Positions 6,415 through 61,007 of a stretch of DNA of 64,000 nucleotides are shown here, one piece after another. The notes beneath the pieces were generated by a model. The model made no database searches and had not been told where the DNA came from. It saw nothing but the letters and a program-made list of their open reading frames with translations. The DNA lies in contig NW_018408883.1 in NCBI RefSeq assembly GCF_002113885.1, forward strand, positions 235,933 through 299,932, in the 5' to 3' direction. The stretch is from Mizuhopecten yessoensis (Eukaryota). The position numbers and the translations under genes were made by a program. Numbering within the stretch: the stretch's first letter is position 1; each line of letters begins with the position of its first letter.

Positions 6415-7812
6415 ATACATGCTCTGTTACAAGGGGGCTCACATGCACTGTTACAAGGGGGCTCACACGCACTGTTACAAGGGGGCTGACATGCTCTGTT
6501 ACAAGGCGGCTCACATGCTCTGTTTCAAGGGGGCTCTCATGCACTGTTACAAGGAGGCTCACATGTACTGTTACAAGGGGGCGCACATGCTCTGTTACAG
6601 GGGGGCTCACATGCTCTTTTACAAGGGGGCGCACATGCTCTGTTACAAGAGGGCTCAAATGCACTGTTACAAGGGGCCTCACATGCACTGTTACAGGGGG
6701 GCTCACATGCTCTTTTACAAGGGGGCGCACATGCTCTGTTACAGGGGGGTTTACATGCTCTGTTACAAGAGGGCTCAAATGCACTGTTACAAGGGGGCAC
6801 GCATGCACTGTTACAAGGAGGATCACATGCACTGTAACAAGGGGGCTCACATGATCTGTTACAAGGGGGCTCCCATGCCCTGTTACAAGGGGGCTCCCAT
6901 GCACTGTTACAAGGAGGATCAAATGCACTGTTACAAGGGGCCTCACATGCACTGTTTCAAGGGAGCTTATATGCTCTGTTACAAGTGGACTCACATGCTC
7001 TGTAACAAGGGGGCTCACATGATCTGTTACAAGGGGGCTCCCATGCACTGTTACAAGGGGACTCACATGCTCTGTAACAAGGGGGCTCACATGTACTGTT
7101 ACACGGGGGCTCACATGCACTGGTACAAGGGGGCTCACATGCGCTGTTACAAGGGTGCTCACATGCTCTGTTACAAGAGGGCTCAAATGCACTGTTACAA
7201 GGGGGTTCACATGCTCTGCTACAAGGGGGCTCACATGATCTGTTACAAGGGGGCTTACATGCACTGTTACAAGAGGGCTCAAATGCACTGTTACAAGGGG
7301 CCTCACATGCACTGTTACGAGGGGGCTCACATGCACTGGTACAAGAGGGCTCACATGCTCTGTTTCAAGGGGGCTCTCATGCACTGTTACAAGGAGGCTC
7401 ACATGCACTGTTCCAAGGGGGCTCACATGCTCTGCTACAAGGGGGCTCACATCCACTGTTACAAGGGGGCTGACATGCTCTGTTACAAGGCGGCTCACAT
7501 GCACTGTTGCAAGGGGGCTCCCATGCACTGTTACAAGGAGGATCAAATGCACTGTTACAAGGGGCCTCACATGCACTGTTTCAAGGGAGCTTATATGCTC
7601 TGTTACAAGTGGACTCACATGCTCTGTAACAAGGGGGCTCACATGTCTTGTTACAAGGGGGCTCAAATGCTCTGTTACAAGGGGGCTTACATGCACTGTT
7701 ACAAGGGGGCTCACATGCACTGTTACAAGGGGTCTCACATGCACTGTTACAAGGAGGATCACATGCACTGTTACAAGGGGGCTCACATGAAGCACTGTTA
7801 CAAAGGGGCTCT
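6415..7812. repeat. 24-bp minisatellite, ~58 copies, stop-free in one frame on each strand
   Basis: Unit GCTCACATGCACTGTTACAAGGGG; ORFs 6365-7999(+) (GAHMHCYK)n and 6380-7795(-) (HVSPLVTV)n. Confidence 0.95.
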
Positions 7813-15925: not shown

Positions 15926-17154
15926 CGCCACAAAATGGTGGTGGCAACGCTGACGTCATTTTAAAGTGCCAAAACATTGAAGTGTCACAAATTGGATGAC
16001 ACATCTGTCCCAATTTTCTGATAATAGGCTGACAGGAGGAGCATTGGAAGACTACAATATAAGGCGCCGTGGACACTCGTCTCCTACAGATACACACAAT
16101 ATAAGGCGCCGTAGACACTCGTCTCCTACGGTTACACAGTAGCGGCAGCCTAACTGGTGTTATCATTATTTGGCATATGTTAGGCATTACGTAAAATAGT
16201 TTAAAAAGGTAAATAATCAGGGTTTTTTGGGTTTTTTTTTAATATTTTATGTTCACACAACACCCCAAATCATACAAAAATTGTTTCCAGACACTCAAGG
16301 GCCATTTCATTATTCCTTTTACTGGCCATTTCTGTTGCAAACACTGATTGCATTTTACATCTATAAATCATCTCCCAGATTTGTTCAGCATGAATGAGCC
16401 GAACGTCTTATATCCGATTTAAGATTTAATGGGTTTTTTCTGATATCACTCTTACACGTAAAAATCACCAACAACAAGTCGTAATTTATAGATTTAGATA
16501 GCAAAAATGGTGGGACAGTTAGCGTAAACGAGATACCCCAGGTACATTAAACGCTTGGCATGGAGAGTCAATCGCGATTACAGGAATTCTGTTCATCTGG
16601 ATATCTACATATGTAAATAGCTTTTTGCTTCTTTGAAAGATTATAAATAGTACAGGCACTTATGATGTGATAGTTCCATGTAAACATGGAGTCGCCGTTC
16701 GAGATAATCCCGGACCATACTAATTACAGTCGGTATTGCAATCGGACGGGATTCATCACGAACGCATCCATTAGGCTTCGGGACGTCAGCGGTTCACTCA
16801 ACTTTACGTACAACACAATACGGAGCTGATAAATGTACAGCATCATATGAGATTTACCAAACGAGTCTAGACGGTTTGTTTAGTGAGACATTCAAGGTTC
16901 TTTCTATAACTCAGAATTCATTTGAATGTCATGTCATTGTCACCCCAACGTCAACTTTGTAATGACCCGATTCGGAAATAGATTACGCCACAATTAGTTT
17001 CCTTAATGTGACGTCGTGATAGGAAAAAATCTCTGACGTCATATTTTAAAGGTCAAATACTAGAATTCCCTGCATAACAGAAAGAGGGAATAGACTTATA
17101 AAGGCTATGCCTGTTGTCCAATTCATTTGTTTTTGAAACAATAAAATATGTAAG

Positions 17155-17310
17155 TAATGAATGTTTAAGTAAATGGTGTTATGGTCCAATAACACACATT
17201 GCTATTGATGACAGACTTAATAAAGCGCCCGGTAGGGCTTTATGTAAGTTTGTGAGCAATACAATTGTGTGTTATAGGACCATAACAATATTTGCTGAAA
17301 CATTCATTAT
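17155..17310. repeat. Long imperfect palindrome (~72-bp arms, GC-rich loop)
   Basis: TAATGAATGTTT..TGTTATGGTCC..ATAACACACA..ATAAAGC arm mirrored around GCCCGGTAGG. Confidence 0.85.
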
Positions 17311-17399
17311 ATATATTAACATTATAATAGAGTAGTTACTCATTATTTAGTTATTTCGAACAGTTCTTTGAACAGCATATTAACTGTTGACAACAATGA

Positions 17400-17482
17400 A
17401 ATTGATGACGTCACAATATAGATTGATGACGTCAAAATATACATTGATGACGTCACAATACAGATTGATGACGTTACAATAG
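17400..17482. repeat. 21-bp tandem repeat x4 containing TGACGTCA
   Basis: ATTGATGACGTCACAATATAG units. Confidence 0.85.
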
Positions 17483-35592: not shown

Positions 35593-36561
35593 TATAAATC
35601 AGTTACAAAAACGTACACATTTATACCATATGAAAGTAGTAAGAGGCGTGTGTAATATAACCTTCTGCTAGGTTAAAGGTATGGAGAGATGATATAGTAT
35701 TAAAAGTAGAAATTGAACAAAGTTTTCCTGTGCATACTTTTCTGTTTTCATTCGTGACAATGTTACATGTATATATATATTTCATTAGATGCGATAGGTT
35801 ATGGCCACAGAAACCGGTCATTTCAGAGTGCTTAGCCTAGCGTTCACAGATCATACCAAGCACAATATCCAACAAACCAATCACATTTAGGTTTAAAGTA
35901 AATAGATTTCAGAGAGTTTCACTATGTATAATATCAACGGCAAACACATTTGCTTAATCCAACTTACAATTTTAATAGAATTGTATACTTCAGCCCGCTG
36001 GAAATTACATAACAATAACACAAAGCCCTATGTGGTCTATTAAATTGTCTACAATGGAGGGATTTGCTGATAATTTGGTTAGCCTTTTGGTGTATTCAAA
36101 TCGAGGTCTGCTAATCTCTCGTCGATTGATCGGAGTCAACTAGTGTTAACTGGAGTTCTGATGTAGAGCACAAATATACTCGTCCCTTAAATCAGGCAGG
36201 GAGTTAAAAAATATATTGATATGTATTACATGTATCAACAATAAGGGTACAGATAAAGCGTGTTCCTATGGAGAAATATATATATAACTATGCATATCCT
36301 TTTTAGATTTAACCTCGTGACAAAGTCCAGGGATATTCTATCGGTAACTTTTATATTCTTTATAACTTATATTTATATATCAGACCACATACATACCTAA
36401 TAATGTCTTTGATGTTTTGTCACGTTCTCTTGACTGACTTCTAATTGCCTATTCAGTTGATATCGATAGTTTGATTACGACTAGTATGGACGGTAATATC
36501 CGTTGGTGATTTATGTGACGTATTTTTTATGCATACAAATTTCCCAATAGCCAAAACTACC

Positions 36562-37608
36562 TAAGTGGCCTCCTTAAACCACAGCCAGAACTACTCGTGT
36601 GGGTATACCTTTAGTGGCCTCCTTAAACTACAACCAGAACTACTCGTGTGGGTATACATTAAGTGGCCTCCTTAAACTACAGTCAGAACTACTCGTGTGG
36701 GTATGCATTTAGTGGCCTCCTTAAACTACAGCCAGAACTACTCTTGTGGGTATACATTAAGTGGCCTCCTTAAACTACAGCCAGAACTACTCTTGTGGGT
36801 ATACATTAAGTGGCCTCCTTAAACTACAGCCAGAACTACACGTGTGGGTATACCTTAAGTGGCCTCCTTAAACTACAGTCAGAACTACTCGTGTGGGTAT
36901 GCATTTAGTGGCCTCCTTAAACTACAGTCAGAACTACTCTTGTGGGCATATCTTAAGTGGCCTCCTTAAACTACAGCCAGAACTACTCTTGTGAGTATAC
37001 CTTAAGTGGCCTCATTAAACTACAGCCAGAACTACTCTTGTGAGTATACCTTAAGTGGCATCATTAAACTACAGCCAGAACTACTCTTGTGGGTATACCT
37101 TAAATGGCCTCCTTAAACTACAGCCAGAACTACTCGTGTGGGTATGCCTTTTGTGGCCTCCTTAAACTACAGCCAGAACTACTATTGTGGGTATACCTTT
37201 AGTGGCCTCCTTAAACTACAGCCAGAACTACTCGTGTGTGTATTCCTTTAGTGGCCTCCTTAAACTATAGCCAGAACTACTCTTGTGGTTATACCTTAAG
37301 TGGCCACCTAAAACTACAGCCAGAACTACTCTTATGAGTATACCTTAAGTGGCCTCATTAAACTACAGCCAGAACTACTCTTGTGGGTATACCTTAAGTG
37401 GCCTCCTTAATCTACAGCCATAACTACTCTTGTGGGTATGCCTTTAGTGGCCTCCTTAAACTACAGCCAGAACTACTCGTGTGGGTATTCCTTTAGTGGC
37501 CTCCTTAAACTATAGCCAGAACTACTCGTGTGGGTATACCTTAAGTGGCCTCCTTAAACTACAGCCATAACTACTCTTGTGGGTATGCCTTTAGTGGCCT
37601 CCTTTAAC
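36562..37608. repeat. 49-bp tandem array, ~21 copies
   Basis: GTGGCCTCC recurs at 36565, 36614, 36663, 36712 and onward. Confidence 0.95.
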
Positions 37609-39506
37609 TTCACTCACTTACTGTATATCTAGCATAGAATAATATGCAACATATCTTAAGCTTTTAATTGTTTATGCTATTACTTTTAAGTCACAATGAA
37701 AATGTCTATATGTTTAATTTGACTAAATGGACACATATTAAGTGGTCATTTTATTCCTAAGCAGCTACACGTGTTTAGTGGCCACATGTCTTATGTTTTT
37801 CAGCAAAAAGTAACTTACTGTGTACTTAAATCTGACTTACAATTCACTATGTCATTTACTAGGTATTACACTAAGAAGTCAATTGTATTGAGGTACATGT
37901 ATCACGCTGCTTTCAAGGCTAATTAATATAATTAAAAACAAAACGCACTTGCCGATTTAATTAAATATGATTTTTTTGGCACAACCTTTCAATGACACAG
38001 CCATATCAAATGCCTAAATGTTTATGTCCATCACTAAGGAAGCTACCTTATGACGTCATAGATGGCATTTTGACGTCATATTTTTCCTTACTTATCTAAA
38101 ACAATTCTGCATAAGTATGTTTATGCTGTTAAAGGGCTAAGCATCCATAATATAGAATATCAAAGTATCATTCAAGTATGCAGATAGAAGAATAAGCCCG
38201 CTAAGTATATTACCGATTTACATATTTACGATGTGTAAGGGATGACTACATATAAAGAGTAGTACTAGGATAAGTGTTGATGGTCCGATTGTAATACAGT
38301 CACTGTTATAATACTATTTTACATTCCGAATTAATTGCCTTTTCATGTCACCTTAAATAACACGAATGTCAATTTCATTCAGGAAATGAACATAGATTCA
38401 ATTATTGTTGTTTCTAACATCATTAATAAATACATTACTGTTTGATACATGTGTCACCTCTCATAAGTTATATTATTCTTTAATGAAACTTGACGCTAAA
38501 GAAACCATAGGAGTCACTCTTAATGTCAATAAAACATATCAAATAACAACATAGAATAATAAAGTTATCCACAAAGAAACGACTGAGATTAAGGATAAAC
38601 CAGTAATTTGATGTTTATTTGAATGTACAGCGACGACATTATTTTGATTTCCTTTCAATTATCTTTTAGAAAGCCTTTCCGTTATGGACACTGTTAGCAC
38701 AAATGTTATTGACACACTTTTGTAAACACTTAAAGTTGGAATACAGTGATAATGTACGTCGTTTTTGACTCATTGTAATATTTCTTAATTTATTAATATG
38801 CATCAACAACAATAAAAAAGAATGATAAGCATAAATGGATTAACATTTTTTTGGCGTGGCTCAAATCCGAAGATATTCCGTTTTATGAGCTTTTTAAGCT
38901 TAACGAATCGAAGATCGAGCGATATTTAGGTGCACAATATCAGATAGACCGTCATGATTTCCAATTTTGGTCTGAATTCCAGGTTTCGTTTACCGATTGT
39001 GATGATAATTATTTTTTCAAATCTTGGTACAAGCATTTTTGTGTCATGTAAATACATTACACAACTTCATTGATATGGTAAAGCACAAGAGAAGAAGTAT
39101 GAATAAAACTACAATTCGGAACTCAAAATATATAAAACTTGAGTAAAATATGAACAAAGTAAAGTTTTACGCTGAGGTTTTTGAAATGGTACAATGATGA
39201 TAAGACTATGTATTTTGTAAGGGAAAGCAACTGCTTCGTCAGCGACAACTGCCATATACATTTCGGTCAAATATGAAGTTACATCACGCACTCAAAATGA
39301 TAACCAGGGAGGAGACAATGGAAAAAGGGAAACGCTGATTAGCATAAAAGACAATGAAATGTATGCTGCACAAGGAAATGTAATATTTCCAAAATGAGAT
39401 ATTGATGATCAAATCTATGTATGTCGAAGAAGCTGCGACACGTTCCACGAATCACTTTTCTTGTCTCCACATCATTTTGAGACTGATGTGTAATGTTATG
39501 AATTCG

Positions 39507-40751: not shown

Positions 40752-42035
40752 GGTTTGTGTCTATGTACGTCAAGCAGGTCTAGTTTAGTTTTGTGCCTAT
40801 GTACGTCAGACAGGTTTAGTTTTGTTTTGTTTGTCCTGTGCCTATGTACGTCAGGCAGGTTTAGTTTTGTTTGTCCTGTGCCTGTGTACGTCAGGCAGGT
40901 TTAGTTTAGTTTTGTTTGTCCTGTGCCTATGTAAGTCAGGCAGGTTTAGTTTAGTTTTGTGCATATGTACGTCAGGCAGGTTTAGTTAAGTTTGTTTGTC
41001 CTGTGCCTATGTACGTCAGGCAGGTTTAGTTAAGTTATGTGCCTATGTACGTCAGGCAGGTCTAGTTTAGTTTAGATTTGTGCCTAGGTACGTCAGGCAG
41101 GTTTAGTTTAGTTTTGTGCCTATGTACGTCAGGCAGGTTTAGTTTTGTTTTGTGCTTATGTACGTCAGGCAGGTTTAGTTTAGTTTTGTGCCTATGTACG
41201 TCAGGCAGGTTTAGTTTAGTTTTGTTTGTCCTGTGCCTATGTACGTCAGGCAGGTTTAGTTTTGTTTTGTGCCTATGTACGTCAGACAGGTCTAGTTTAG
41301 TTTTGTGCTTATGTACGTCAGGCAGGTTTAGTTTAGTTTAGTTTTGTGCCTATGTACATCAGGCAGGTTTAGTTTAGTTTTGTGTCTATGTACGTCATGC
41401 AGGTTTAGTTTTGTTTTGTGCCTATGTACGTCAGGCAGGTTTAGTTTAGTTTAGTTTTGCGCCTATGTACATCAGGCAGGTTTAGTTTAGTTTTGTGTCC
41501 ATGTACGTCATGCAGGTTTAGTTTTGTTTTGTGCCTATGCACGTCAGACAGGTCTAGTTTAGTTTTGTGCTTATGTTCGTCAGGCAGGTTTAGTTTAGTT
41601 TAGTTTTGTGCCTATGTACGTCAGGCAGGGTTAGTTTAGTTTTGTGCCTATGTACGTCAGGCAGGTTTAGTTTAGTTTAGTTTTGTGCCTATGTACATCA
41701 GGCAGGTTAAGTTTAGTTTTGTGTCTATGTACGTCATGCAGGTTTAGTTTTGTTTTGTACCTATGTACGTCAGGCAGGTCTAGTTTAGTTTTGTTTGTCC
41801 TGTGCCTGTGAACGTTAGGCAGGTTTAGTTTAGTTTTGTGCCTATGTACATCAGGCAGATTTAGTTTAGTTTTGTGCCTATTTACGTCAGGCAGGTTTAG
41901 TTTAGTTAAGTTTTGTACCTATGTACGTCAGGCAGGTTTAGTTTAGTTTTGTTTGTCCTGTGCCTGTGTACGTCAGGCAGGTTTAGTAAAAATGTGTGCC
42001 TATGTACGTCAGGCAGGTCTAATTAAGTTTTGTTT
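40752..42035. repeat. Minisatellite, ~36-46 bp units with variable numbers of GTTTW pentamers, ~30 copies
   Basis: Constant TGTGCCTATGTACGTCAGGCAG followed by (GTTTA/GTTTT)n. Confidence 0.95.
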
Positions 42036-43915: not shown

Positions 43916-46609
43916 GTAAAACGCTGTACGTGTGTCATGATTAGACTGAGGGTTGGTATGGGTGCTTCATTCTTTTGTTATTCAACTGATCTTTTACGTG
44001 ACAAGGTGGGTGACTCTGCTGGTGATATATCCGTTCCCGTGCTGAGTTTGGCTGTAGCCGTGCTGCTTGAATTTTTTCTGGCAGTGTCTATGGGTATAAC
44101 TATCTGTTGTAGTTACAATTTGTAAATTTTGTAACGTTATGAAGCGTTTTATAGGTATATTTCTATTTTCATTATATTTTATATGTTTCTGAACACTTTA
44201 GATATAGATGTTCATTCTGTTAACCTTAAGTACCACTGATGAACCCTCAATAGAAGAAATGACCTTATCGTGTGAAAGGTTCGTTTTGTTCACACCGTCT
44301 GTTTATACACAATTTAGTCCCCTTTGCCCAAGGATGCCCAGGGCAAAATCTAGTTTCAATCCCTCTAAGGGTACATAAGAACAAGGTCAACTCAACTGGA
44401 TCTTTATGTCTATTTAAGGTAAAGCTTCTGGAATAAAGTAGCCCTGTGTTACAAACCTGGTAATGGAAACTTTACCCAAATTTTGTATTCAGTAAACAAA
44501 ACTTTAACCAAAAACTTAGCATTGTGTCGAAATATGTCTGTAGAGATCTACAGGAAAGAAACACACAACAGAAAGGTTTATCTCGAGGATTTTTCACACT
44601 TGGATTTTTTGTTAATCAGGCTTTGAATAAATGGTCCATGACTTCATTTCTGGATTTTTAATTGGGAATTATTGGTCTTTCCTTTTCTTAACTTTTAGAT
44701 GCTTGCTTGAGGTGTTTTTGTTGTCTTTCGTATTGCACTGCATATACGAAAATATATGTAAAGTCAAAATTGACACAGCTCAAATAGTGGATGTTATTAT
44801 TTAAATTGTTTTTGTCTTGGAATAAGACTTTATTGTATTTGATGTATTTTAATATATCTTCACTGTCGTTAGTGTAAAACTAAAATCAATCCATACACCT
44901 TATGAATATAGGATAAATATCTATTTTCCAAAACGTACAACAGTGTAATTTATTTCTAATATAAGTCAATAGTGGAAATAGGTTGGTCATATTGACATCA
45001 GGCATAACTGTAGAGAACACAGGTAAAACAAACCTAATCACCACTTCAGGGGGTCTAGCACTACGGGATTACCTGTACTCTAAACGTATTACACTACCAG
45101 CTTTAACGTACTGAATACCTAGTGCACTGACAAGGCTGTAACCTCTATTCACAATTGGGGAGTGGGCTTGGGGAGGGGGGTCGCGGTGACAATTCGCCTT
45201 TTATTAAAATAAAGCAGCGCTTGTTAGCTTTGCCGACGAAACAAAGCGCCGTTATGAATGTAAAACGGCGTGTTTTCTCTCTCTGCCTTGGTGAAAATTG
45301 GAAAAGCTAAATTATCCCTAATCAGGAACCCATATACATTTGAAAGGGGTTTTTTTCCGTTTATATAATAGACCTTTCTCCTACACTTTAGTCGGTCCCA
45401 ACACAATGTTACTTTTGTGATTTCACGGAGTAAAGAAATATCATTCTTCAACGCCATGCCATAGTATTTAATTTGTAATATAGTAGAAATTGAATTCATG
45501 ATCAGTTATGAATCATTGTGTTACTTTATACCACTTACCAGTTACGTTATACTTCTGTATCAGTTACCATAGATTATCAGTTCGGTAATGCTCGTGAAAA
45601 AGTTAAGAACTGTCAGTGCAGCAAAGCTTTTTTTGAGTCAGTGAAGTAACACTATTGCTTGAAGACTTCATCAGTCTTTCGTGGGTCAAACATCATTGTT
45701 ACTATAAGTCGAGTACGAATCGAACTTATTTTATTATCAATACGTGGTTATGGTCATAACATCTGTTCGACGGTCGTAGTAAATATGATGCTGCAACTTG
45801 AAGTTTGATGTTGTTGTCTGAATGTTTAAACTGTAAATTCTAGTACACTCACCATACGAAGCAAATATAGAAATGGTATTGGACCAAAATAGTGTTACAC
45901 ATAGAAGATTTCAGCAATAATAATAAAGCTGACTTGACAACCATACCAATAGATACACCAAACAAGAACAGTTTACGGGGAAAAAAATGGTTGTGTTCTT
46001 GGGTGTGGAATACCGCGATTGTATGTCTAAATAATAAATGTATATTTGGTTACAAATGAAGAGGCTGTTTTCAGGGAATCTAGTTTGTTGGCCATTGAAA
46101 TAAAACAAGTTTTAAAAAATATGTTAATTTACAATAGAGATTTAGAACCAAATCAGAGGGTCAAATCTCATGTAAAAAATACTCCAGAGGGTCTACACCC
46201 AAGGGTCTACACCCAAGGGTTTACACAGGAAACCCTATTGTTCACCAGGTGCACCAAATAAATGTGTTACAACATCGACTAACACGATACTTAAATGGTC
46301 GCATCATTGCATCGTTCAAAAACGTGAGGGTGACAGTTACAGTGATTATGCAAAATTAAATAATAAAGTTTCTGACATGTTTTCTGTATCGTTTTAATCA
46401 AGACTAAAGTCTAACAACAGCCGATCACGTTTCTATTCCATAAGGCGGTTCAGCACTGTTTATTTAAAAGTGCTCCCCATATGGGAACATCTAATTAAAA
46501 ATTAAAAAAAAGTGATCATGTATTTATGTATATATCTGAAAAAAGTATTGTTCCTAAATCTTGCTTGTGACGTAGCATCGAGACTACAATGTGTATCATA
46601 CAAACTGAC

Positions 46610-48975
46610 TGGTGACCGTCACAGTCTACCTTGTACGTGTATCACAGAACATGTATCGTGGGACCTGTCTAGTGATCCGTCACAGTCTCCCTTGTACGTG
46701 TATCACAGAACATGTATCGTGATACCTGTCTAGTGATCCGTCACAGTCTTCCTTGTACGTGTATCACAGAACATGTATCGTGAGACCTGACTAGTGATCC
46801 GTCAGTCTACCTTGTACATGTATCACAGAACATGTATCGTGGGACCTGCCTAGTGATCCGTCAGTCTACCTTGTACGTGTATCACAGAACATGTATCGTG
46901 GGACCTGACTAGTGATCCGTCAGTCTACCTTGTACGTGTATCACAGAACATGTATCGTGGGACCTTTCTAGTGATCCGTCACACTCTACCTTGTACGTGT
47001 TTCACAGAACATGTATCGTGGGACCTGTCAAGTTATCCGTCAGTCTACCTTGTACGTGTTTCACAGAATATGTATCGTGGGACCTATCTAGTGATCCGTC
47101 ACGGTCTACCTTGTACGTGTTTCACAGAACATGGATCGTGGGACCTGTCTAGTGATCCGTCAGTCTACCTTGTAAGTGTTTCACAGAACATGTATCGTGG
47201 GACCTATCTAGTGATCGGGCACACTCTACCTTGTACGTGTTTCACAGAACATGTATCGTGGGTCCTGTGTAGTGATCCGTCACAGTCTACCTTGTACGTG
47301 TTTCAAAGAACATGTATCGTGGGACCTGTCTAGTGAACCGTCACACTCTACCTTGTACGTGTATCAAAGAACATGTATCGTGAGACCTGTCTAGTGATCC
47401 GTCACAGTCTGCCTTGTACGTGTTTCACAGAACATGTATCGTGGGTCCTGTGTAGTGATCCGTCACAGTCTACCTTGTACGTGATTCGCAGAATATGTAT
47501 AGTGAGACCTGTCTAGTGATCCGTCACAGTCTACCTTGTACGTGCATCACAGAACATGTATCGTGGGACCTGTCTAGTGATCCGTCAGTCTACCTTGTAA
47601 GTGTTTCACAGAACATGTATCGTGGGACCTATCTAGTGATCGGGCACACTCTACCTTGTACGTGTTTCACAGAACATGTATCGTGAGACCTCTCTAGTGA
47701 TCCGTCACAGTCTACCTTGTACGTGTTTCAAAGAACATGTATCGTGGGACCTGTCTAGTGATCAGTCAGTCTACCTTGTACGGGTTTCACAGAACATGTA
47801 TCGTGGGACCTGTCTAGTGATCAGTCAGTCTACCTTGTACGGGTTTCACAGAACATGTATCGTGGGACCTGTCTAGTAATCCGTCAGTCTACCTTGTACG
47901 TGTTTCACAGAACATGTATCGGGGGACCTGTCTAGTGATCCGTCACAGTCTAACTTGTACGTGTTTCACAGAACATGTATCGCGGGACCTGTCTAGTGAT
48001 CCGTCACAGTCTAACTTGTACGTGTTTCACAGAACATGTATCGGGGGACCTATCTAGTGATCCGTCACAGTCTACCTTGTACGTGTTTCAAAGAACATGT
48101 ATCGTGGGACCTGTCTAGTGAACCGTCACACTCTACCTTGTACGTGTATCAAAGAACATGTATCGTGAGACCTGTCTAGTGATCCGTCACAGTCTGCCTT
48201 GTACGTGTTTCACAGAACATGTATCGCGGGACCTGTCTAGTGATCCGTCACAGTCTAACTTGTACGTGTTTCACAGAACATGTATCGGGGGACCTGTCTA
48301 GTGATCCGTCACAGTCTAACTTGTACGTGTTTCACAGAACATGTATCGTGAGACCTGTCTAGTGATCCGTCACACTCTACCTTGTACGTGCATCACCGAA
48401 CATGTATCGTGAGACCTCTCTAGTGATCCGTCACAGTCTACCTTGTACGTGTTTCACAGGACATGTCTCGTGGCACCTGTCTAGTGATCCGTCAAAGTCT
48501 ACCTTGTACGTGTATCACAGAACATGTATCTTGGGACCTGTCTAGTGATCCGTCACACTCTACCTTGTACGTGCATCACCGAACATGTATCGTGAGACCT
48601 CTCTAGTGATCCGTCACAGTCTACCTTGTACGTGTTTCACAGAACATGTATCGTGGGACCTATCTAGTGATCGGGCACACTCTACCTTGTACGTGTTTCA
48701 CAGAACATGGATCGTGGGACCTGTCTAGTGATCCGGCAGTCTACCTTGTACGTGTTTCACAGAACATGGATCGTGGGACCTGTCTAGTGATCCGTCAGTC
48801 TACCTTGTAAGTGTTTCACAGAACATGTATCGTGGGACCTATCTAGTGATCGGGCACACTCTACCTTGTACGTGTTTCACAGAACATGTATCGTGGGTCC
48901 TGTCTAGTGATCCGTCACAGTCTACCTTGTACGTGTATCACAGTACATGTATCGTGGGACCTGACTAGTGACCCA
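46610..48975. repeat. 59/61-bp tandem array, ~39 copies (intron 1)
   Basis: Unit CTAGTGATCCGTC(AC)AGTCTACCTTGTACGTGTTTCACAGAACATGTATCGTGGGACCTGT. Confidence 0.95.
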
Positions 48976-51599
48976 CATAGTCTACAGCCTATTCGTTTAA
49001 GATGCATTTCAAGACAAACATTTCCTTTAAGTTTACAAGCGTTTTAAACACTGACATAGCAGATTTATGTATTCTTCAATTTGTTGTTTTGTTGCGTCAA
49101 AATAAACAAATACATTTATTACAATCACTTTTTACCTAAAGGTAGCTTATGTGTGAGATGCATGTCAAAATGTTTGCATATAATCAGCTGATCTTAGCAG
49201 CCGATTATATATTGCTGTCAAACTGTCTCGCACTAATTTGTATTCTATTGTAGCAGTGATGCTGTCAATCAGCTGCTATACCGTCACTACACCATAATAT
49301 CGCTATAATAATCAGACTTGTCTCGTCTCTATAACAAACAAACAATTGATTACACTTGATAACAAATTCCCGTGTGTTTGTTAATACCTCCTTGTAGATC
49401 AGATAGGGACGGTTAATAAAGTGTTATTTTTGAAGGGTTCATGCTCCTTTTTTTGTTAGGATACATCTAAACTATTCGTTTTTCTTGTTTGGTTTGAAAA
49501 TCTTTCAAATAAAACCAGTTCCTTTGGTTTGGTTTGGTTTCGACATGAAGTTTGGACATTTTTCTTGATTATTGTCAATGTGATGTAAATATACTATAAC
49601 TTGCTATTCTATAACAAGCATTAAAAACATTAAAAGTTCCAAAAATAATATACATGTTATTCGATAACAAATATCCCACATATTCATTCGAATGAAAAGA
49701 TACAGATACATTCTTACCTCCAAACCTCAGCTAAAATTAACAAGGAGTTAGGAACAATATGTTAATAGGACTACAATAAAATAACAAACATCTGATATAA
49801 TTTAAATGCTAACGAGTGGTTGAGACAAATAAAATTATGTGTTTTGAAGATTTATTTTGCTTTAAAAACCTATGCTTCTCATTGGCAGCACTTTGAATGA
49901 TTCACTAACCATTGTCTAGGACGACCAACCTGGTGATACCGGAGGCCTGGATTTCTAAATAAAATATGATGTAATTTTATTTTTAACAGACTATTGGGTA
50001 GGATTAGAGTTTTAGTTTATCAGTCCAGAATTTTGTGTGGTACAAGTACGTTGTAGTGTTTGCTTTGATATGATCTATAGAACGGGCGCGTCTTTTCTTT
50101 GATTGGAACAAAAATGAGTAATATTTATTTTAAATAAAAGTTCTTATCGTTGGATAAAATACATTTTAGATTTATCAAGGAATATACCTACATAGATTGC
50201 GCTTCACAGTTGTCGTTTTGTTCTTGTAATTGTTACAAATTACCTTTAAATTTGTACCTGCCAGTATCAGATAAAAAATCTGTTGATATATATTCAGACA
50301 AGACGAGGTCTATTTTCATATCATATTTCCAATAAATTCATTCTTACATTGATCAAAAATAATAAATCCATGATCAAATGACCGATTGGAAAGTCTTGAT
50401 ATGGATCCATGATATTCGATGAGAATTCCTTAAACGTATTACGATATATAATTTGAAACATCAAATATATATTTTTATCACTACTTTGTTTGCTGTATGA
50501 GACAAATTTATCTTCGTGCAAACATTTTTAATCATCTAAACTTTGGTTGAAATATATATATAATATATCATATGTAATAAGATACGTATTTATTTTTGTG
50601 TGACATTCTCTTTTTTTCTGTTCGAATGCGACGACGTTTATTTGGAGCAGGAGTCATATTTGAGTTTAAGTCGATACAGAATAGCGCCCAGAAGTGCACG
50701 TGATGCTGATATTTTGATATAAAAGTTACATTAAGTAGTGTATATTATAATAACATATGTATTAGTCCTGAGACTACCAATAGCTTTCGAGTGTATTTGT
50801 TTTAATGTTAAGACAATATATAACCATTTTTTATCTTCCACATTTGATTTTGCAACACAAGCAAACAATGGGAAGTATGACGTGACAATAAGACAATAAT
50901 TTACATGACGTTATTATTCTACAATAAAGTGAACTCACATTTTATTTAGTAGGTAACATAATGCAAGTCATATGTTAAATAAAGACACAAAAAATCAATC
51001 AGGTTTCTTAACGATTGATTAGTCCATCCTTAGTAGAGAGTCGGGGTTGTCTTCAATCCAGATCCCTTACGGGTAGATTCCCTATCTCAAGCCAAACATA
51101 TTCTTACATTATGATTGAACGGTACCTTTATGCAAAATTACCACATATATTATGTACTTAAGCGTTGCCATCTGATATTGGCTTGCCAATGAACATTCTT
51201 AAAAGGCGTTTACCTATCAGAAAACTGACTGAGTTCTATAATAATGACTGTGTGTCGTCGATGAAACAATATTGATGAAACATAACTCAAAAAATGTACC
51301 TTTTGAGGAATGATTTTTCGAAATCAAACCCGTGAACTGAGGTGAAATGTGAAATGTAAAAAAAAACCACCAATGGCGTCATGAAGTAGATAAAGTGTGG
51401 TTGGGTGAAATAATGTACAATCAACACTCAGACATTGAATCTTTCCTATGTTGACTCTGTGTTAGTTTATTTATGTTTAGTGGGTTCTTTTTGCATTTTT
51501 TTCCGTTTATTTGTGTTCTTTTGCAGTCAGTCAGTCGATGGACAAACTTATGCCTATTAGATCATCAATGATTGAATTAATTGTTTTTCCTTTTTTCAG

Positions 51600-58642: not shown

Positions 58643-59266
58643 GTAGGGCATTCTGAACATATAAAATATGTTTTGTCTAATGACGTTATATGTGCTGTCT
58701 AATGACGTTATATGAATTGTCTAACGTCGTAATATGTATTGTCCAATGGCGTTATATGTATTGTCCAATGGCGTTATATATATTGTCTAATGACGTTTTA
58801 TGTGCTGTCTAATGACGCAATATGTATTGTCTAATGTCGTAATATGTATTGTTCAATGGCGTTATATGTATTGTCTAATGACGTTATATGAATTGTCTAA
58901 CGTCGTAATATGTATTGTCCAATGGCGTTATATATATTGTCTAATGACGTAATATGTACGATCTAATGATATAAATTGTACTGTCTAATGACGTTATATA
59001 TATTGTCTAATGACGTAATATGTCCTATCTAATAACGTATTATGTCCTGTCTAATGAAGTAATATGTCCTGTCTAATGACCTTATATGTATTGTCTAATG
59101 ACGTTATATGTACTGTTTAATGACGTCATATGTACTGTCTAATGACGTAACATGTTCTGTCTAATGACGTAATATGTTCTATCTAATGATGTAATATGTA
59201 CGGTCTAATGACGTAATATGAACTGTCCAATGGCGTGATATGTACGGTCTAATGACGTAATATATA

Positions 59267-59732
59267 TTGTTACACCTCAAGTGAATTTCTAGCTATTTGA
59301 TTGGTTGGGAGAAAATTAAACAAAAATCTCTGTCACCTTCCCAAAATACATTGGTTTAAAATTTGATATTGCCATGAGACAGTGAAAAATATCACATGCG
59401 CGAAAAATGTGCGTTCACCGCTCCGTTTCCCCACCGTGATGGTCACAAGAACGTTTGACGGCAACAGCCAATATTATCAAGCGCCGGTGCGATAGCGATT
59501 GTAAACAGCAGACTATCAACAAACAGGATGTCATTATCGAGGTTTGCTGCCGTTTCTGAGCTACAAAGACTTTTGGTGTAAAAAAATAGATATGACATTC
59601 ATTAGCAGGTGACAGTGATTATTGTCAACCCTCAAACACCCATTGTCACCCTCTGCTTCGCCTCGGGTGACAATGGTTTTCTCGGGTTGACAATATTCAT
59701 TGTCATCTGCTAATGAATGTCATATTTATATA
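59267..59732 (+). mobile_element. Crypton-like non-autonomous element, copy 1
   Basis: No TIRs; 6-bp direct repeat TATATA/TATATA; 136-bp subterminal palindrome at 59590-59725; mini-ORF MSLSRFAAVSELQRLLV* at 59528. The family label is inference. Confidence 0.7.
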
Positions 59733-60041
59733 CTGTCCAAAGACGTAATATGTACGGGTCTAATGAAGTAATATGTACTGTCCAATGACGTAATATGTAC
59801 GGTCTAATGACGTAATATGTTCTGTCTAATGACGTAATATGTACGGTCTAATGACGTAATATGAACTGTCCAATGGCGTGATATGTACGGTCTAATGACG
59901 TAATATATACTATCCAAAGACGTAATATGTACGGTCTAATGACGTAATATGTACTGTCCAATGACGTAATATGTACGGTCTATTGTCGTGATATTTACTG
60001 TCTAATTACGTTATATGTACCATCTAATGACGTAATATGTA

Positions 60042-60514
60042 TTGTTACACCTCAAGTGAATTTCTAGCTATTTGATTGGTTGGGAGAAAATTAAACAAAA
60101 ATCTCTGTCACCCTCCGAAAATACATTGGTGTTAAGGGGCGCGGGTGATATTGCCATGAGACAGTGAAAAATATCACATGCGCGAAAAATGTGCGTTCAC
60201 CGCTCCGTTTCCCCACCGTGATGGTCGAAAGAACGTTTGACGGCAACAGCCAATTTTATCAAACGCCGGTGCGATAGCGATTGTAAACAGCAGACTATCA
60301 ACAGACAAGATGTCATTATCGAGGTTTGCTGCCGTTTCTGAGCTACAAAGACTTTTGGTGTAACAAAAAAGATATGACATTCATTAGCAGGTGATAGTGA
60401 ATATTGTCAACCGGAGAAAACCATTGACACCGGAGGCGAAGCGGGGGGTGACAATGGGTGTTTGGGGGTTGTCAATATTCACTGTCACCTGCTAATGAAT
60501 GTCATATTTATATA
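60042..60514 (+). mobile_element. Crypton-like non-autonomous element, copy 2
   Basis: Same termini as copy 1; flanking hexamers TATGTA/TATATA; palindrome at 60372-60507 with inverted centre. Confidence 0.7.
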
Positions 60515-61007
60515 CTGTCTAACGACGTAATTAGTATTGTCTAATGCCGTCATTAGAGGTTATTTCTCAAATAGTATTCCTACTCCCATATTATTTCACA
60601 AACAGGTGTAAAATAAAGTGCATATTAAGCATTCGATTAGTAATGGTCCATTTGAATTTACGTGACGTGTTACCAATGAAAAACATAGTGTTCATCAGAA
60701 CGGGTTTTGTAGGTATGTTGAAGATAAAAGCGAGATACAGAACGTTTAACATATGTAAACAATGTTAATCCACAAACTGATTCTGTTTGTAATTAAGTCA
60801 AACTACAAACAAGGAAAGTTAATGTTGTGTGTTTCTGTTGTGCTTATACCACGTTTTATCTAAACAATTCATGTTTTGTTTCATCATTATAAGCCGCATT
60901 TGAGAATCCCTTTAACGTAATAACCTGATTTGAAAATTCAGCTGGCTTAGTAATGTTCAAAACTTTAATGTATAAATGTTATTGCAAGCATTTGTTTTCT
61001 CTCTCAG

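What the first reader, a model, noticed from the sequence alone, without database searches (positions are those of the whole stretch)
59590..60507. Two sibling elements carry flip and flop isomers of the same terminal palindrome
Seen: both ~470-bp elements lie in the same orientation and end in a ~136-bp palindrome, but the asymmetric centre is reversed. Copy 1 reads CCTCAAACACCCATTGTCACCCTCTGCTTCGCCTCGGGTGACAATGGTTTTCTCGG. Copy 2 reads CGGAGAAAACCATTGACACCGGAGGCGAAGCGGGGGGTGACAATGGGTGTTTGGGG, essentially its reverse complement. Established: flip/flop termini result from hairpin resolution in parvoviruses and poxviruses, and tyrosine recombinases can invert DNA between inverted sites. Inference: this family may pass through a hairpin-ended or cruciform-resolved intermediate rather than only a simple excision circle.
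Basis: partly seen in the sequence, partly recalled or inferred. Interest (0 to 1): 0.8.

Follow-up and report, generated by a model that had tools for sequence, protein, structure and literature searches.

The report
Transposon end hairpin occasionally flips
Two neighbouring copies of a small non-coding mobile element really do carry the middle of their 136-base end hairpin in opposite orientations, but across the genome the flipped form is a roughly 9% minority that fits ordinary instability of an imperfect palindrome better than a virus-like hairpin replication cycle.

Summary
Copy 1 (59267-59732) and copy 2 (60042-60514) lie in the same orientation. Each ends in a 136-nt imperfect palindrome, and the two asymmetric centres are reverse complements: 47/54 identical reversed against 33/54 direct.

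The element is a dispersed non-coding repeat of about 470 bp, with at least 417 candidate copies. Its architecture is Helentron/HINE-like: a 5' terminal repeat complementary to a 3' subterminal repeat, then a 3' hairpin and a short tail, with no target-site duplication. The hairpin is far longer than usual. No autonomous partner was found.

Counted genome-wide with the centre tied to the element's 3' end:
- 92 flip copies and 9 complete flop copies.
- 6 loop-only inversions.
- Several symmetrised palindromes and many deletions at the hairpin tip.

The young subfamily is 33 flip to 1 flop and the older one is 14 to 5. Flop-type left halves occur on three body backgrounds, and complete flops carry either of two bubble alleles.

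The best reading is sporadic inversion and arm homogenisation, by template switching or recombination between the inverted arms. Most events probably happened after insertion, and a few flop copies were then propagated. A parvovirus-like obligatory hairpin transfer is rejected (p about 1e-18).

The orientation calls rest on the assembly, because the public read contigs could not span the arms. The scan noted a similar flip/flop hairpin elsewhere in this genome (s1-549987, not checked).

The parts
59267..59732 (+). Element copy 1 (466 bp), flip isomer, which is the majority form in the genome
   Evidence: Limits were set from the paralogous empty site and from 30 or more other loci where homology stops at TTGTTACACC on the 5' side and at CATATTTATATA on the 3' side.
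59267..59282 (+). 5' terminal inverted repeat of copy 1 (TTGTTACACCTCAAGT)
   Evidence: It is complementary to the subterminal repeat just upstream of the palindrome. In the family consensus the 18-nt form with its leading Ts matches 16 of 18 (I4/I5, 23).
59569..59585 (+). 3' subterminal inverted repeat of copy 1 (ACTTTTGGTGTAA...)
59590..59725 (+). 136-nt imperfect palindrome of copy 1. Outer arms 59590-59631 and 59684-59725; bubble 59632-59639 and 59677-59683; inner stem 59640-59651 and 59665-59676; apex 59652-59664.
   Evidence: Fold; alignments.
59726..59732 (+). Conserved 3' tail (TTATATA) after the palindrome; the element ends here
   Evidence: The last six bases (TATATA) are invariant in 90 copies chosen for carrying the exact end motif, and the next base is variable.
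60042..60514 (+). Element copy 2 (473 bp), flop isomer
60351..60368 (+). 3' subterminal inverted repeat of copy 2
60372..60507 (+). 136-nt palindrome of copy 2. Arms 60372-60412 and 60467-60507; inverted centre 60413-60466.
   Evidence: (I3).
58665..59266 (+). 22-bp satellite array upstream of copy 1
   Evidence: (27.5 copies).
59733..60041 (+). 22-bp satellite array between the copies. It contains the paralogous empty site of copy 1 at 59869-59938.
   Evidence: The 40 nt upstream plus 30 nt downstream of copy 1 are found joined there, with 1 substitution and 1 one-base deletion in that 70-nt span. This shows there is no target-site duplication.
60515..60558 (+). Last two satellite monomers after copy 2; unique sequence follows
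   Evidence: A single-copy contig covering 60490-60900 is present in 4 runs from 4 studies.

Best explanation
The two copies belong to a family of about 470-bp non-coding rolling-circle-type elements. By architecture it is Helentron/HINE-like: a 5' terminal repeat, a complementary 3' subterminal repeat, then a 3' hairpin and a short tail, with no target-site duplication. The 3' hairpin is an unusually long (136 nt) imperfect palindrome with three nested asymmetries: an 8x7-nt bubble, a 2-nt mismatch and a 3-nt apical loop. The source copies are in the 'flip' state, and that is how almost all young copies arrive (inferred from the 33:1 ratio). The 'flop' state arises now and then when the DNA between a pair of inverted arms is inverted. 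The most likely route is polymerase template switching, or recombination or repair in reversed register, between the 42-bp outer arms or between the 12-bp inner arms. The same process also homogenises the arms and deletes around the apex. Most of this happens to copies after insertion. A few flop copies seem to have been copied further. In this window, two related copies sitting at the same register of a 22-bp satellite ended up in opposite states. What is shown: the element anatomy, the counts, the nested partial forms and the link with copy age. What is inferred: the template-switch mechanism and that it acts in place.
For: 1. Both isomers exist genome-wide but unequally. Anchored to the body, 96 copies have a flip-type left half and 15 a flop-type left half. 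Anchored to the 3' tail, 92 have flip loop plus flip bubble, 9 have flop plus flop, 6 have flop loop with flip bubble, 3 have a half-symmetrised loop (GGCGAAGCCTC), and none has flip loop with flop bubble.
2. The full spectrum expected of an unstable quasi-palindrome appears in 120 classified copies. There are 68 intact flip and 8 intact flop entries. One of those flop entries is the palindrome of an intact flip copy read from the opposite strand; one further flop copy is cut short after its right bubble. There are also 2 loop-only inversions, palindromes symmetrised in both directions (L035 and L036 one way, L079 and L089 the other), many apex-centred deletions, and a deletion between two TGTCACC direct repeats seen 6 times.
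3. The young subfamily A has 33 flip, 1 flop and 10 rearranged copies. The older subfamily B has 14, 5 and 18. Fisher p = 0.018. Body divergence from consensus is 1.9% for flip, 3.5% for flop and 2.6% for rearranged copies (Mann-Whitney p = 0.027 and 0.007).
4. There was not one event. Flop-type left halves occur on three body haplotype backgrounds. Both bubble alleles occur in both orientations: CAAAAAC in 96 flip and at least 8 flop copies, CAAACAC in 6 flip and 2 flop copies.
5. The two window copies share the rare CAAACAC allele and a body variant seen in only 3 of 97 copies, yet differ in orientation.
6. Copies with a flop-type left half whose right half is deleted (L034, L037, L038, L039, L043) are no longer palindromic. 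Their orientation therefore cannot be a graph-assembly ambiguity.
7. Template switching between imperfect inverted repeats is reported to give exactly these two outcomes, arm homogenisation and spacer inversion (PMC8604942). Hairpin-linked recurrent microinversions are established in chloroplast DNA (reviewed in PMC3123225).
8. The HINE-like architecture follows, compared with the definitions in PMC4067079 and PMC7492417.
Against: The body tree is star-like. An AU test cannot reject a single flop clade (p = 0.18), so the case for several events rests on haplotype and allele combinations that recombination or parallel mutation could also produce. Five flops share a GGGGGAC-type inner-stem variant (L033, L040, L041 and L045, and C1728). 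That variant occurs in only 3 of 92 flips. This argues that part of the flop class is a propagated lineage rather than independent events in place. No read-level evidence shows a flip at a fixed locus. Orientation of intact palindromes depends on an assembly that has gaps exactly at these elements. Template switching cannot be told apart here from arm-to-arm recombination or from reversed-register break repair. Helentron membership is unproven because no autonomous partner was examined and the one empty site is not a TT site.
Confidence: 0.6

Rival explanations
1. Orientation is a lineage marker. One or very few ancient inversions occurred in a source copy of the older subfamily, and the flop source then transposed. 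Present flop copies are its descendants, and nothing flips in place.
For: Flops are concentrated in subfamily B (5 of 7; Fisher p = 0.018). The AU test does not reject a single flop clade (p = 0.18). Five flops at different loci share a GGGGGAC-type variant that is present in only 3 of 92 flips.
Against: One complete flop (L041), one flop-loop copy with its right arm deleted (L043) and two other copies with a flop-type left half (L035, L038) lie on the two young haplotype backgrounds. Both bubble alleles occur in both orientations. Six loop-only inversions and palindromes symmetrised both ways need further independent events anyway. The two window copies share rare variants but differ in orientation. 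On the tree, flop needs 7 changes for 7 copies, the same as shuffled labels.
Confidence: 0.2
2. Flipping happens during transposition at a low rate. The single-stranded rolling-circle intermediate folds its 3' hairpin, and second-strand synthesis or end processing occasionally copies the centre in reverse. Flop copies would then be born flopped. This is a weak form of the first reader's idea.
For: The element has the anatomy of a single-strand (HUH-type) transposon with a very stable hairpin of -50 kcal/mol. Flop copies have intact ends and distinct flanks, as new insertions would. A 1-in-34 rate in the young subfamily is compatible with a low per-event rate.
Against: The flop and rearranged fractions rise with copy age, as expected for change after insertion. 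The palindrome is followed by a conserved 7-nt tail, so it cannot self-prime as a terminal hairpin without trimming. An obligatory hairpin transfer is excluded: 92:9 against 1:1 gives p about 2e-18, and 33:1 gives p about 4e-9.
Confidence: 0.12
3. Assembly artefact. A palindrome and its flop are exact reverse complements, so a k-mer graph with k shorter than the 42-bp arm cannot orient the centre, and some copies were written the wrong way round.
For: The assembly has N gaps starting exactly at element ends or in the palindrome centre (L005, L013, L024). Independent short-read contigs break inside the arms at 60490 in all 4 runs, so nothing independent confirms the orientation of copy 2.
Against: Random orientation would give about 1:1, not 92:9. 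Flop calls correlate with subfamily and age and carry their own variants. Loop-only inversions sit between 12-bp stems and are fully determined by ordinary k-mers. Apex-deleted copies with a flop-type left half are not palindromic at all. In copy 2 the two arms differ at two positions, which links body, arm and centre within 31 nt.
Confidence: 0.06

Closest known systems
HINE / DINE-1-type non-autonomous Helentrons (Helitron superfamily), including Cg_HINE of oysters (PMC4067079, PMC7492417)
   Same: Non-coding and a few hundred bp long. A 5' terminal or subterminal repeat is complementary to a 3' subterminal repeat, which is followed by a palindrome and a short tail. Termini are T-rich. There is no target-site duplication. 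The element is closely associated with short tandem-repeat arrays and has hundreds of copies.
   Different: The 3' palindrome is 136 nt with an internal bubble, against stems of about 5-20 bp in the described families. The tandem arrays flank the element, which is inserted at monomer boundaries, rather than forming its core. The one empty site is TATATA^CT, not TT. No Rep/helicase partner with these ends has been examined.
Flip/flop hairpin telomeres of parvoviruses (AAV ITR, MVM right end) and poxviruses
   Same: An imperfect terminal-region palindrome with an asymmetric bubble exists in two orientations that are reverse complements of each other. In parvoviruses the hairpin is read by an HUH-type nuclease; for this element such a nuclease is only inferred.
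   Different: The ratio is about 10:1, not 1:1. The palindrome is not at the extreme end. Nested parts invert independently. There is a hairpin at one end only, no coding capacity, and the copies are chromosomal and dispersed.
Template-switch mutagenesis and microinversion at imperfect inverted repeats (quasi-palindrome correction; chloroplast hairpin-loop inversions) (PMC8604942, PMC3123225)
   Same: The spacer between inverted arms is inverted, the arms are homogenised, the events recur at the same structure, and they accumulate with time.
   Different: Here the substrate is one sequence present in hundreds of genomic copies. The whole spectrum can therefore be read within a single genome, and the structure is probably a functional transposon end.
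Invertible segments driven by site-specific recombinases (2-micron FLP, phage and bacterial invertases, Crypton-type tyrosine recombinases)
   Same: DNA between inverted repeats is found in both orientations.
   Different: No recombinase gene is associated. Inversions use at least two different nested arm pairs. Deletions and symmetrisations accompany them. One state strongly predominates.

Membership tests
Helentron / HINE (Helitron superfamily) | 12-15 bp subterminal inverted repeats, the 5' one within a few nt of the terminus and the 3' one internal to a 3' palindrome | tested here: met
   The consensus 5' end TTTTGTTACACCTCAAGT matches the reverse complement of ACTTTTGGTGTAACAAAA at 16 of 18 positions. 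The 3' repeat ends 3 nt before the palindrome.
Helentron / HINE (Helitron superfamily) | Stem-loop-forming palindrome close to the 3' terminus | tested here: met
   The palindrome ends 7 nt from the 3' end and folds at -50 kcal/mol, z = -14. At 136 nt with a bubble it is far larger than the 5-20 bp stems described (PMC4067079).
Helentron / HINE (Helitron superfamily) | No target-site duplication | tested here: met
   The paralogous empty site at 59869-59938 joins the two flanks of copy 1 with nothing duplicated. Flank logos of 82 and 90 copies show no repeated bases.
Helentron / HINE (Helitron superfamily) | Insertion within a TT dinucleotide or T-rich target | tested here: inconclusive
   The upstream flank is T-rich, and T is 96-98% at the second base inside the 5' end and at the second base after the 3' end. 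However, the single empty site reads TATATA^CT, with a 6-nt ambiguity and no TT.
Helentron / HINE (Helitron superfamily) | Autonomous partner encoding Rep/helicase (with or without endonuclease) and sharing the termini | not tested
   The genome has 56 Helitron_like_N matches, one in a 2064-aa open frame. None lies within 10 kb of the listed element copies.
Parvovirus/poxvirus-type hairpin telomere (rolling-hairpin replication) | Flip and flop in about equal amounts | tested here: not met
   92 flip to 9 flop genome-wide and 33 to 1 in the young subfamily; binomial p about 2e-18 and 4e-9.
Parvovirus/poxvirus-type hairpin telomere (rolling-hairpin replication) | The palindrome forms the extreme terminus and inverts as one unit | tested here: not met
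   A conserved TTATATA tail follows the palindrome. Six copies have only the inner loop inverted, and at least four in the classified set are symmetrised.
Recombinase-driven invertible segment (tyrosine or serine recombinase) | Associated recombinase gene and one defined crossover site in each inverted repeat | tested here: not met
   There is no ORF of 150 aa or more in or beside the copies, and no Pfam hit in the three window ORFs of 150 aa or more that lie outside tandem arrays. Inversions use at least two nested arm pairs. A recombinase encoded elsewhere and acting in trans was not searched for.
Template-switch / inverted-repeat-mediated microinversion | Spacer inversion bounded by inverted arms, together with arm homogenisation, recurring at the same structure | tested here: met
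   Whole-centre and loop-only inversions, palindromes symmetrised in both directions, and apex deletions. Flop-type forms occur on three body backgrounds, and both bubble alleles occur in both orientations. Frequency rises with copy age. The enzymatic route itself cannot be tested from sequence.

The most novel reading that the evidence does not exclude
The asymmetric bubble hairpin is the strand-specific termination or recognition signal of a rolling-circle (HUH) transposase. The rare flop and loop-only forms are then footprints of a fold-back or template-switch step taken by the single-stranded transposition intermediate itself, so flop copies are born at insertion. That would make this family a natural record of hairpin handling during eukaryotic Helitron-type transposition. 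It would also be a mechanistic bridge to parvoviral Rep-hairpin systems.
Probability: 0.12. Interest if true: 0.65.

Novelty: new variant of a known kind. Interest (0 to 1): 0.35.

Why it matters
The family provides, within one genome, more than a hundred classified copies of a single long imperfect palindrome at different ages. The relative rates of whole-centre inversion, loop-only inversion, arm homogenisation and apex deletion can be read from them directly. That makes it a useful natural data set on palindrome instability in an animal genome.

The element is also an unusual Helentron-like variant, with a 136-nt bubble hairpin at its 3' end. The strong flip bias among young copies suggests that the transposition machinery reads the hairpin's asymmetry strand-specifically. 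This could be tested with a Rep protein once the autonomous partner is found.

It does not, on present evidence, reveal a new replication mode. In my one library search no paper combined Helitron with flip and flop, but the underlying mutational process is known.

Tried and rejected
- Read support. Only k-mer contigs were available. They break inside the arms at 60490 in all 4 runs and are laid on either strand, so they say nothing about orientation or about mixed isomers at one locus. They do show that the 3' junction of copy 2 is shared by 4 runs from 4 studies.
- Tree of the body against orientation. The tree is star-like, with 1 starred branch of 94. Flop needs 7 changes for 7 copies, equal to shuffled labels, but the AU test cannot reject one clade (p = 0.18). 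The tree alone is inconclusive.
- Autonomous partner. I did not try to read them out by other tools.
- Tyrosine recombinase partner. Nothing was found in the window: no ORF of 150 aa or more near the copies and no Pfam hits.
- Rfam. Only a sub-threshold miRNA-like hit on the hairpin (20.9 bits against a cut-off of 90). Rejected as chance.
- SINE or retroelement origin. Considered because 13 of 120 copies are 5'-truncated. There is no poly-A or tRNA-like head, and the inverted-repeat-plus-hairpin ends fit a DNA element better.
- DDE-type MITE. Rejected because there is no target-site duplication.
- Slips. One search failed on a length limit. One search used a gap range that was too long and returned 0; it was corrected.

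Full report
**Observation.** The stretch 58665-60558 is a 22-bp satellite array interrupted twice, at the same monomer register, by a unit of about 470 bp. Copy 1 is 59267-59732 and copy 2 is 60042-60514, both on the + strand. Each consists of a body of about 320 bp followed by a 136-nt palindrome (59590-59725 and 60372-60507) and a 7-nt tail. The bodies are 96% identical over 267 nt. The palindrome of copy 1 aligns better to the reverse complement of copy 2 than to copy 2 directly (scores 114 and 81). Within the asymmetric centre, direct identity is 33/54. That equals the centre's own self-complementarity (34/52). Reverse-complement identity is 47/54. As single-stranded DNA both copies fold into a 42-bp outer stem, an 8x7-nt bubble, a 12-bp inner stem and a small apex. 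Energies are -50.5 and -48.2 kcal/mol, with z = -14 and -13.

**What the unit is.** It is a discrete dispersed repeat. A search of the window's own genome (988 Mb, 82,659 contigs) gave 417 first-look candidates, and the 40 that were scored are 90-100% identical over the full length. In 45 loci with flanks, homology begins at TTGTTACACC and ends at CATATTTATATA, with unrelated sequence outside.

- The 5' end is the reverse complement of the sequence ACTTTTGGTGTAACAAAA that lies 3 nt before the palindrome (16 of 18 positions in the consensus).
- A paralogous empty site for copy 1 survives at 59869-59938. The 40 nt upstream and 30 nt downstream of copy 1 are found joined there with 1 substitution and 1 one-base deletion, so nothing is duplicated on insertion.
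- There is no ORF, no Pfam hit in the neighbouring ORFs tested and no Rfam family.

The combination of a 5' terminal repeat, a complementary 3' subterminal repeat, a 3' palindrome with a short tail, T-rich ends, no target-site duplication and close association with short tandem arrays is the published definition of non-autonomous Helentrons. These are the HINE or DINE-1 elements, including Cg_HINE of oysters (PMC4067079, PMC7492417).

Three things differ from the described families. The palindrome is 136 nt with a bubble rather than a 5-20 bp stem. The arrays flank the element rather than fill it. The one empty site reads TATATA^CT rather than TT. The genome encodes at least 56 Helitron-like Rep matches.

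**Genome-wide census of orientation.**

Anchored to the body by an exact pattern:

| Left half of centre | Copies |
|---|---|
| Flip type | 96 |
| Flop type | 15 |

Anchored to the 3' tail:

| Loop state | Right bubble state | Copies |
|---|---|---|
| Flip | Flip | 92 |
| Flop | Flop | 9 |
| Flop | Flip | 6 |
| Half-symmetrised (GGCGAAGCCTC) | Flip type | 3 |
| Flip | Flop | 0 |

I fetched 116 loci and classified 120 copies. The main classes were:
- 68 intact flip entries.
- 8 intact flop entries. One of them (in L108) is the palindrome of an intact flip copy read from the opposite strand. One further flop copy, L041, is cut short after its right bubble.
- 2 loop-only inversions.
- Palindromes made perfectly symmetric in one direction (L035, L036) or the other (L079, L089).
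- Many deletions with a breakpoint at the apex.
- One deletion between two TGTCACC direct repeats that occurs 6 times.

Of the 15 copies with a flop-type left half, 5 have lost the right half (L034, L037, L038, L039, L043). These are no longer palindromes. Their flop-type left half, joined to the body, therefore cannot be an orientation ambiguity of a graph assembler.

**Does orientation track phylogeny?** The body tree is star-like, with 1 starred branch of 94. Flop needs 7 changes for 7 copies, as do shuffled labels. An AU test does not reject a single flop clade (p = 0.18), so the tree does not decide the question.

Linked diagnostic sites define three body haplotype groups, B, A1 and A2.

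| Form | Group B | Group A1 | Group A2 |
|---|---|---|---|
| Complete flops | 5 | 1 (L041) | 0 |
| Any flop-type left half | 9 | 2 | 2 |

One more complete flop, L044, has an intermediate haplotype and is not assigned to a group.

In the pattern-ascertained set:

| Subfamily | Mean body divergence | Flip | Flop | Rearranged |
|---|---|---|---|---|
| A (young; A1 and A2 combined) | 1.5% | 33 | 1 | 10 |
| B (older) | 2.9% | 14 | 5 | 18 |

Fisher's test on flip against flop gives p = 0.018. Flop and rearranged copies are more diverged than flip copies (p = 0.027 and 0.007).

The bubble has two alleles, and both occur in both orientations. CAAAAAC is found in 96 flip and at least 8 flop copies. 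CAAACAC is found in 6 flip and 2 flop copies. The two window copies share the rare CAAACAC allele and a body variant seen in 3 of 97 copies. They are therefore specifically related, yet opposite in orientation.

Against fully independent events, five flops share a GGGGGAC-type inner-stem variant: L033, L040, L041 and L045 and C1728. That variant is present in 3 of 92 flips. Some flop copies have therefore probably been propagated.

**Mechanism.** A rolling-hairpin or terminal-resolution cycle predicts 1:1 and inversion of the whole palindrome as a unit. The data give 92:9 (p about 2e-18) and 33:1 in young copies (p about 4e-9). Parts of the palindrome also invert independently, and a conserved tail follows it. 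That model is rejected as an obligatory step.

The set of products seen here is what polymerase template switching between imperfect inverted repeats is reported to produce: spacer inversion at either of two nested arm pairs, arm homogenisation in both directions, and apex-centred deletion (PMC8604942). It parallels the recurrent hairpin-linked microinversions of chloroplast DNA (reviewed in PMC3123225). The rise with copy age argues that most events happen to resident copies.

I therefore favour sporadic palindrome instability with limited propagation of flop copies (0.6). The rivals are:
- A pure lineage marker (0.2).
- Low-rate flipping during transposition (0.12).
- An assembly artefact (0.06).

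Recombination between the arms, or break repair in reversed register using any other copy, would give the same products. These routes cannot be separated from template switching here.

**Limits.** The public runs are k-mer contigs. They break at 60490 inside the right arm in all four runs, and they match either strand. They confirm only that the 3' junction of copy 2 is shared by four studies. The orientation of intact palindromes is thus an assembly call, and the assembly has gaps exactly at some of these elements. The taxon was not determined.

**Comparison and novelty.** My one library search found no paper that combined Helitron with flip and flop. Another first-stage note in this genome reports a flip/flop terminal hairpin on a different piece (s1-549987). 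A neighbouring note mentions a Helentron (s1-549984). I could not check either.

The element is best described as a new structural variant of a known kind: HINE-like, with a giant bubble hairpin. The flip/flop is a known mutational phenomenon seen in an unusual and informative substrate.

Noticed in passing
Flanks of about 90 copies (L001-L116); window 59250-59266 and 59733-59745, 60025-60041 and 60515-60527: The insertion flanks are not random. Upstream there is a G-T-G-A-Y-A-T-like motif (A is 95% at one position), followed by about 9 T-rich nt before the element. Downstream the sequence reads N-T-R-T-C-A-C, with T at 96% and 84%. Together the flanks resemble a 3'-end/5'-end junction of the element itself and form a small inverted repeat (GTGACAT ... 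ATGTCAC). This suggests the target is chosen because it mimics the element's own cleavage sites.
   Followed up: partly
L014, L020, L023, L028, L029, L036, L101; window 58665-60558: In at least 7 other loci the element sits inside a tandem array, each with a different monomer (about 22-40 bp). It is always at a monomer boundary, and the monomers begin N-T-R-T and end AT-rich. Either every monomer offers a target-like site or the arrays are generated from end-like sequence. L023 and L024 hold two copies in one array, as this window does.
   Followed up: partly
window 59869-59938: A paralogous empty site of copy 1 lies inside the array between the two copies, with 1 substitution and 1 one-base deletion over 70 nt. 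This could reflect a duplicated array segment that predates the insertion or, less likely, a precise excision.
   Followed up: yes
L048, L051, L059, L091, L094, L099: The identical internal deletion, joining CCCATTGTCACC to TGCTAATG between two TGTCACC direct repeats, is present in 6 copies at different loci. It is either a propagated deletion derivative or recurrent slippage.
   Followed up: no
L108 (G000:C5577:162515-163789): The palindrome is extended outward. At least 107 bp of the body is repeated in inverted orientation on the far side, giving body, palindrome, then reversed body. It looks like a fold-back inverted duplication, but it abuts an N gap, so it may be an assembly chimera.
   Followed up: partly
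L089 (G000:C4644:66090-67364): One copy is inserted tail-first into the left arm of another copy's palindrome, next to CTGTCACC. The element's own arm therefore contains a target-like motif.
   Followed up: partly
L005, L013, L024, L023, L068, L108: Runs of N in the assembly start exactly at the element's 3' end, at its 5' end or in the palindrome centre. These elements seem to be break points for the assembler.
   Followed up: no
Thirteen of the 120 copies (for example L061, L066, L072, L087, L096, L098, L103, L032): These copies are 5'-truncated, starting at consensus positions 17 to 307, while keeping the 3' subterminal repeat and the palindrome. L032, a flop, keeps only 16 nt of body.
   Followed up: partly
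window 16880-17481: A second large palindrome (72-nt arms, 17148-17316) lies about 85 nt upstream of a 21-bp tandem array (17401-17481). At 16884 a GTGAGACATTCAAGGTT motif resembles the upstream flank seen at L010 and L027. This may be a related hairpin-plus-array family.
   Followed up: no
window 1-64000: The window holds about 20 distinct tandem arrays with periods of 11-113 bp (for example 6417-7811, 36558-37609, 40754-42033, 46605-48985). This is an unusually array-rich landscape, of the kind described for HINE-carrying bivalve genomes.
   Followed up: no
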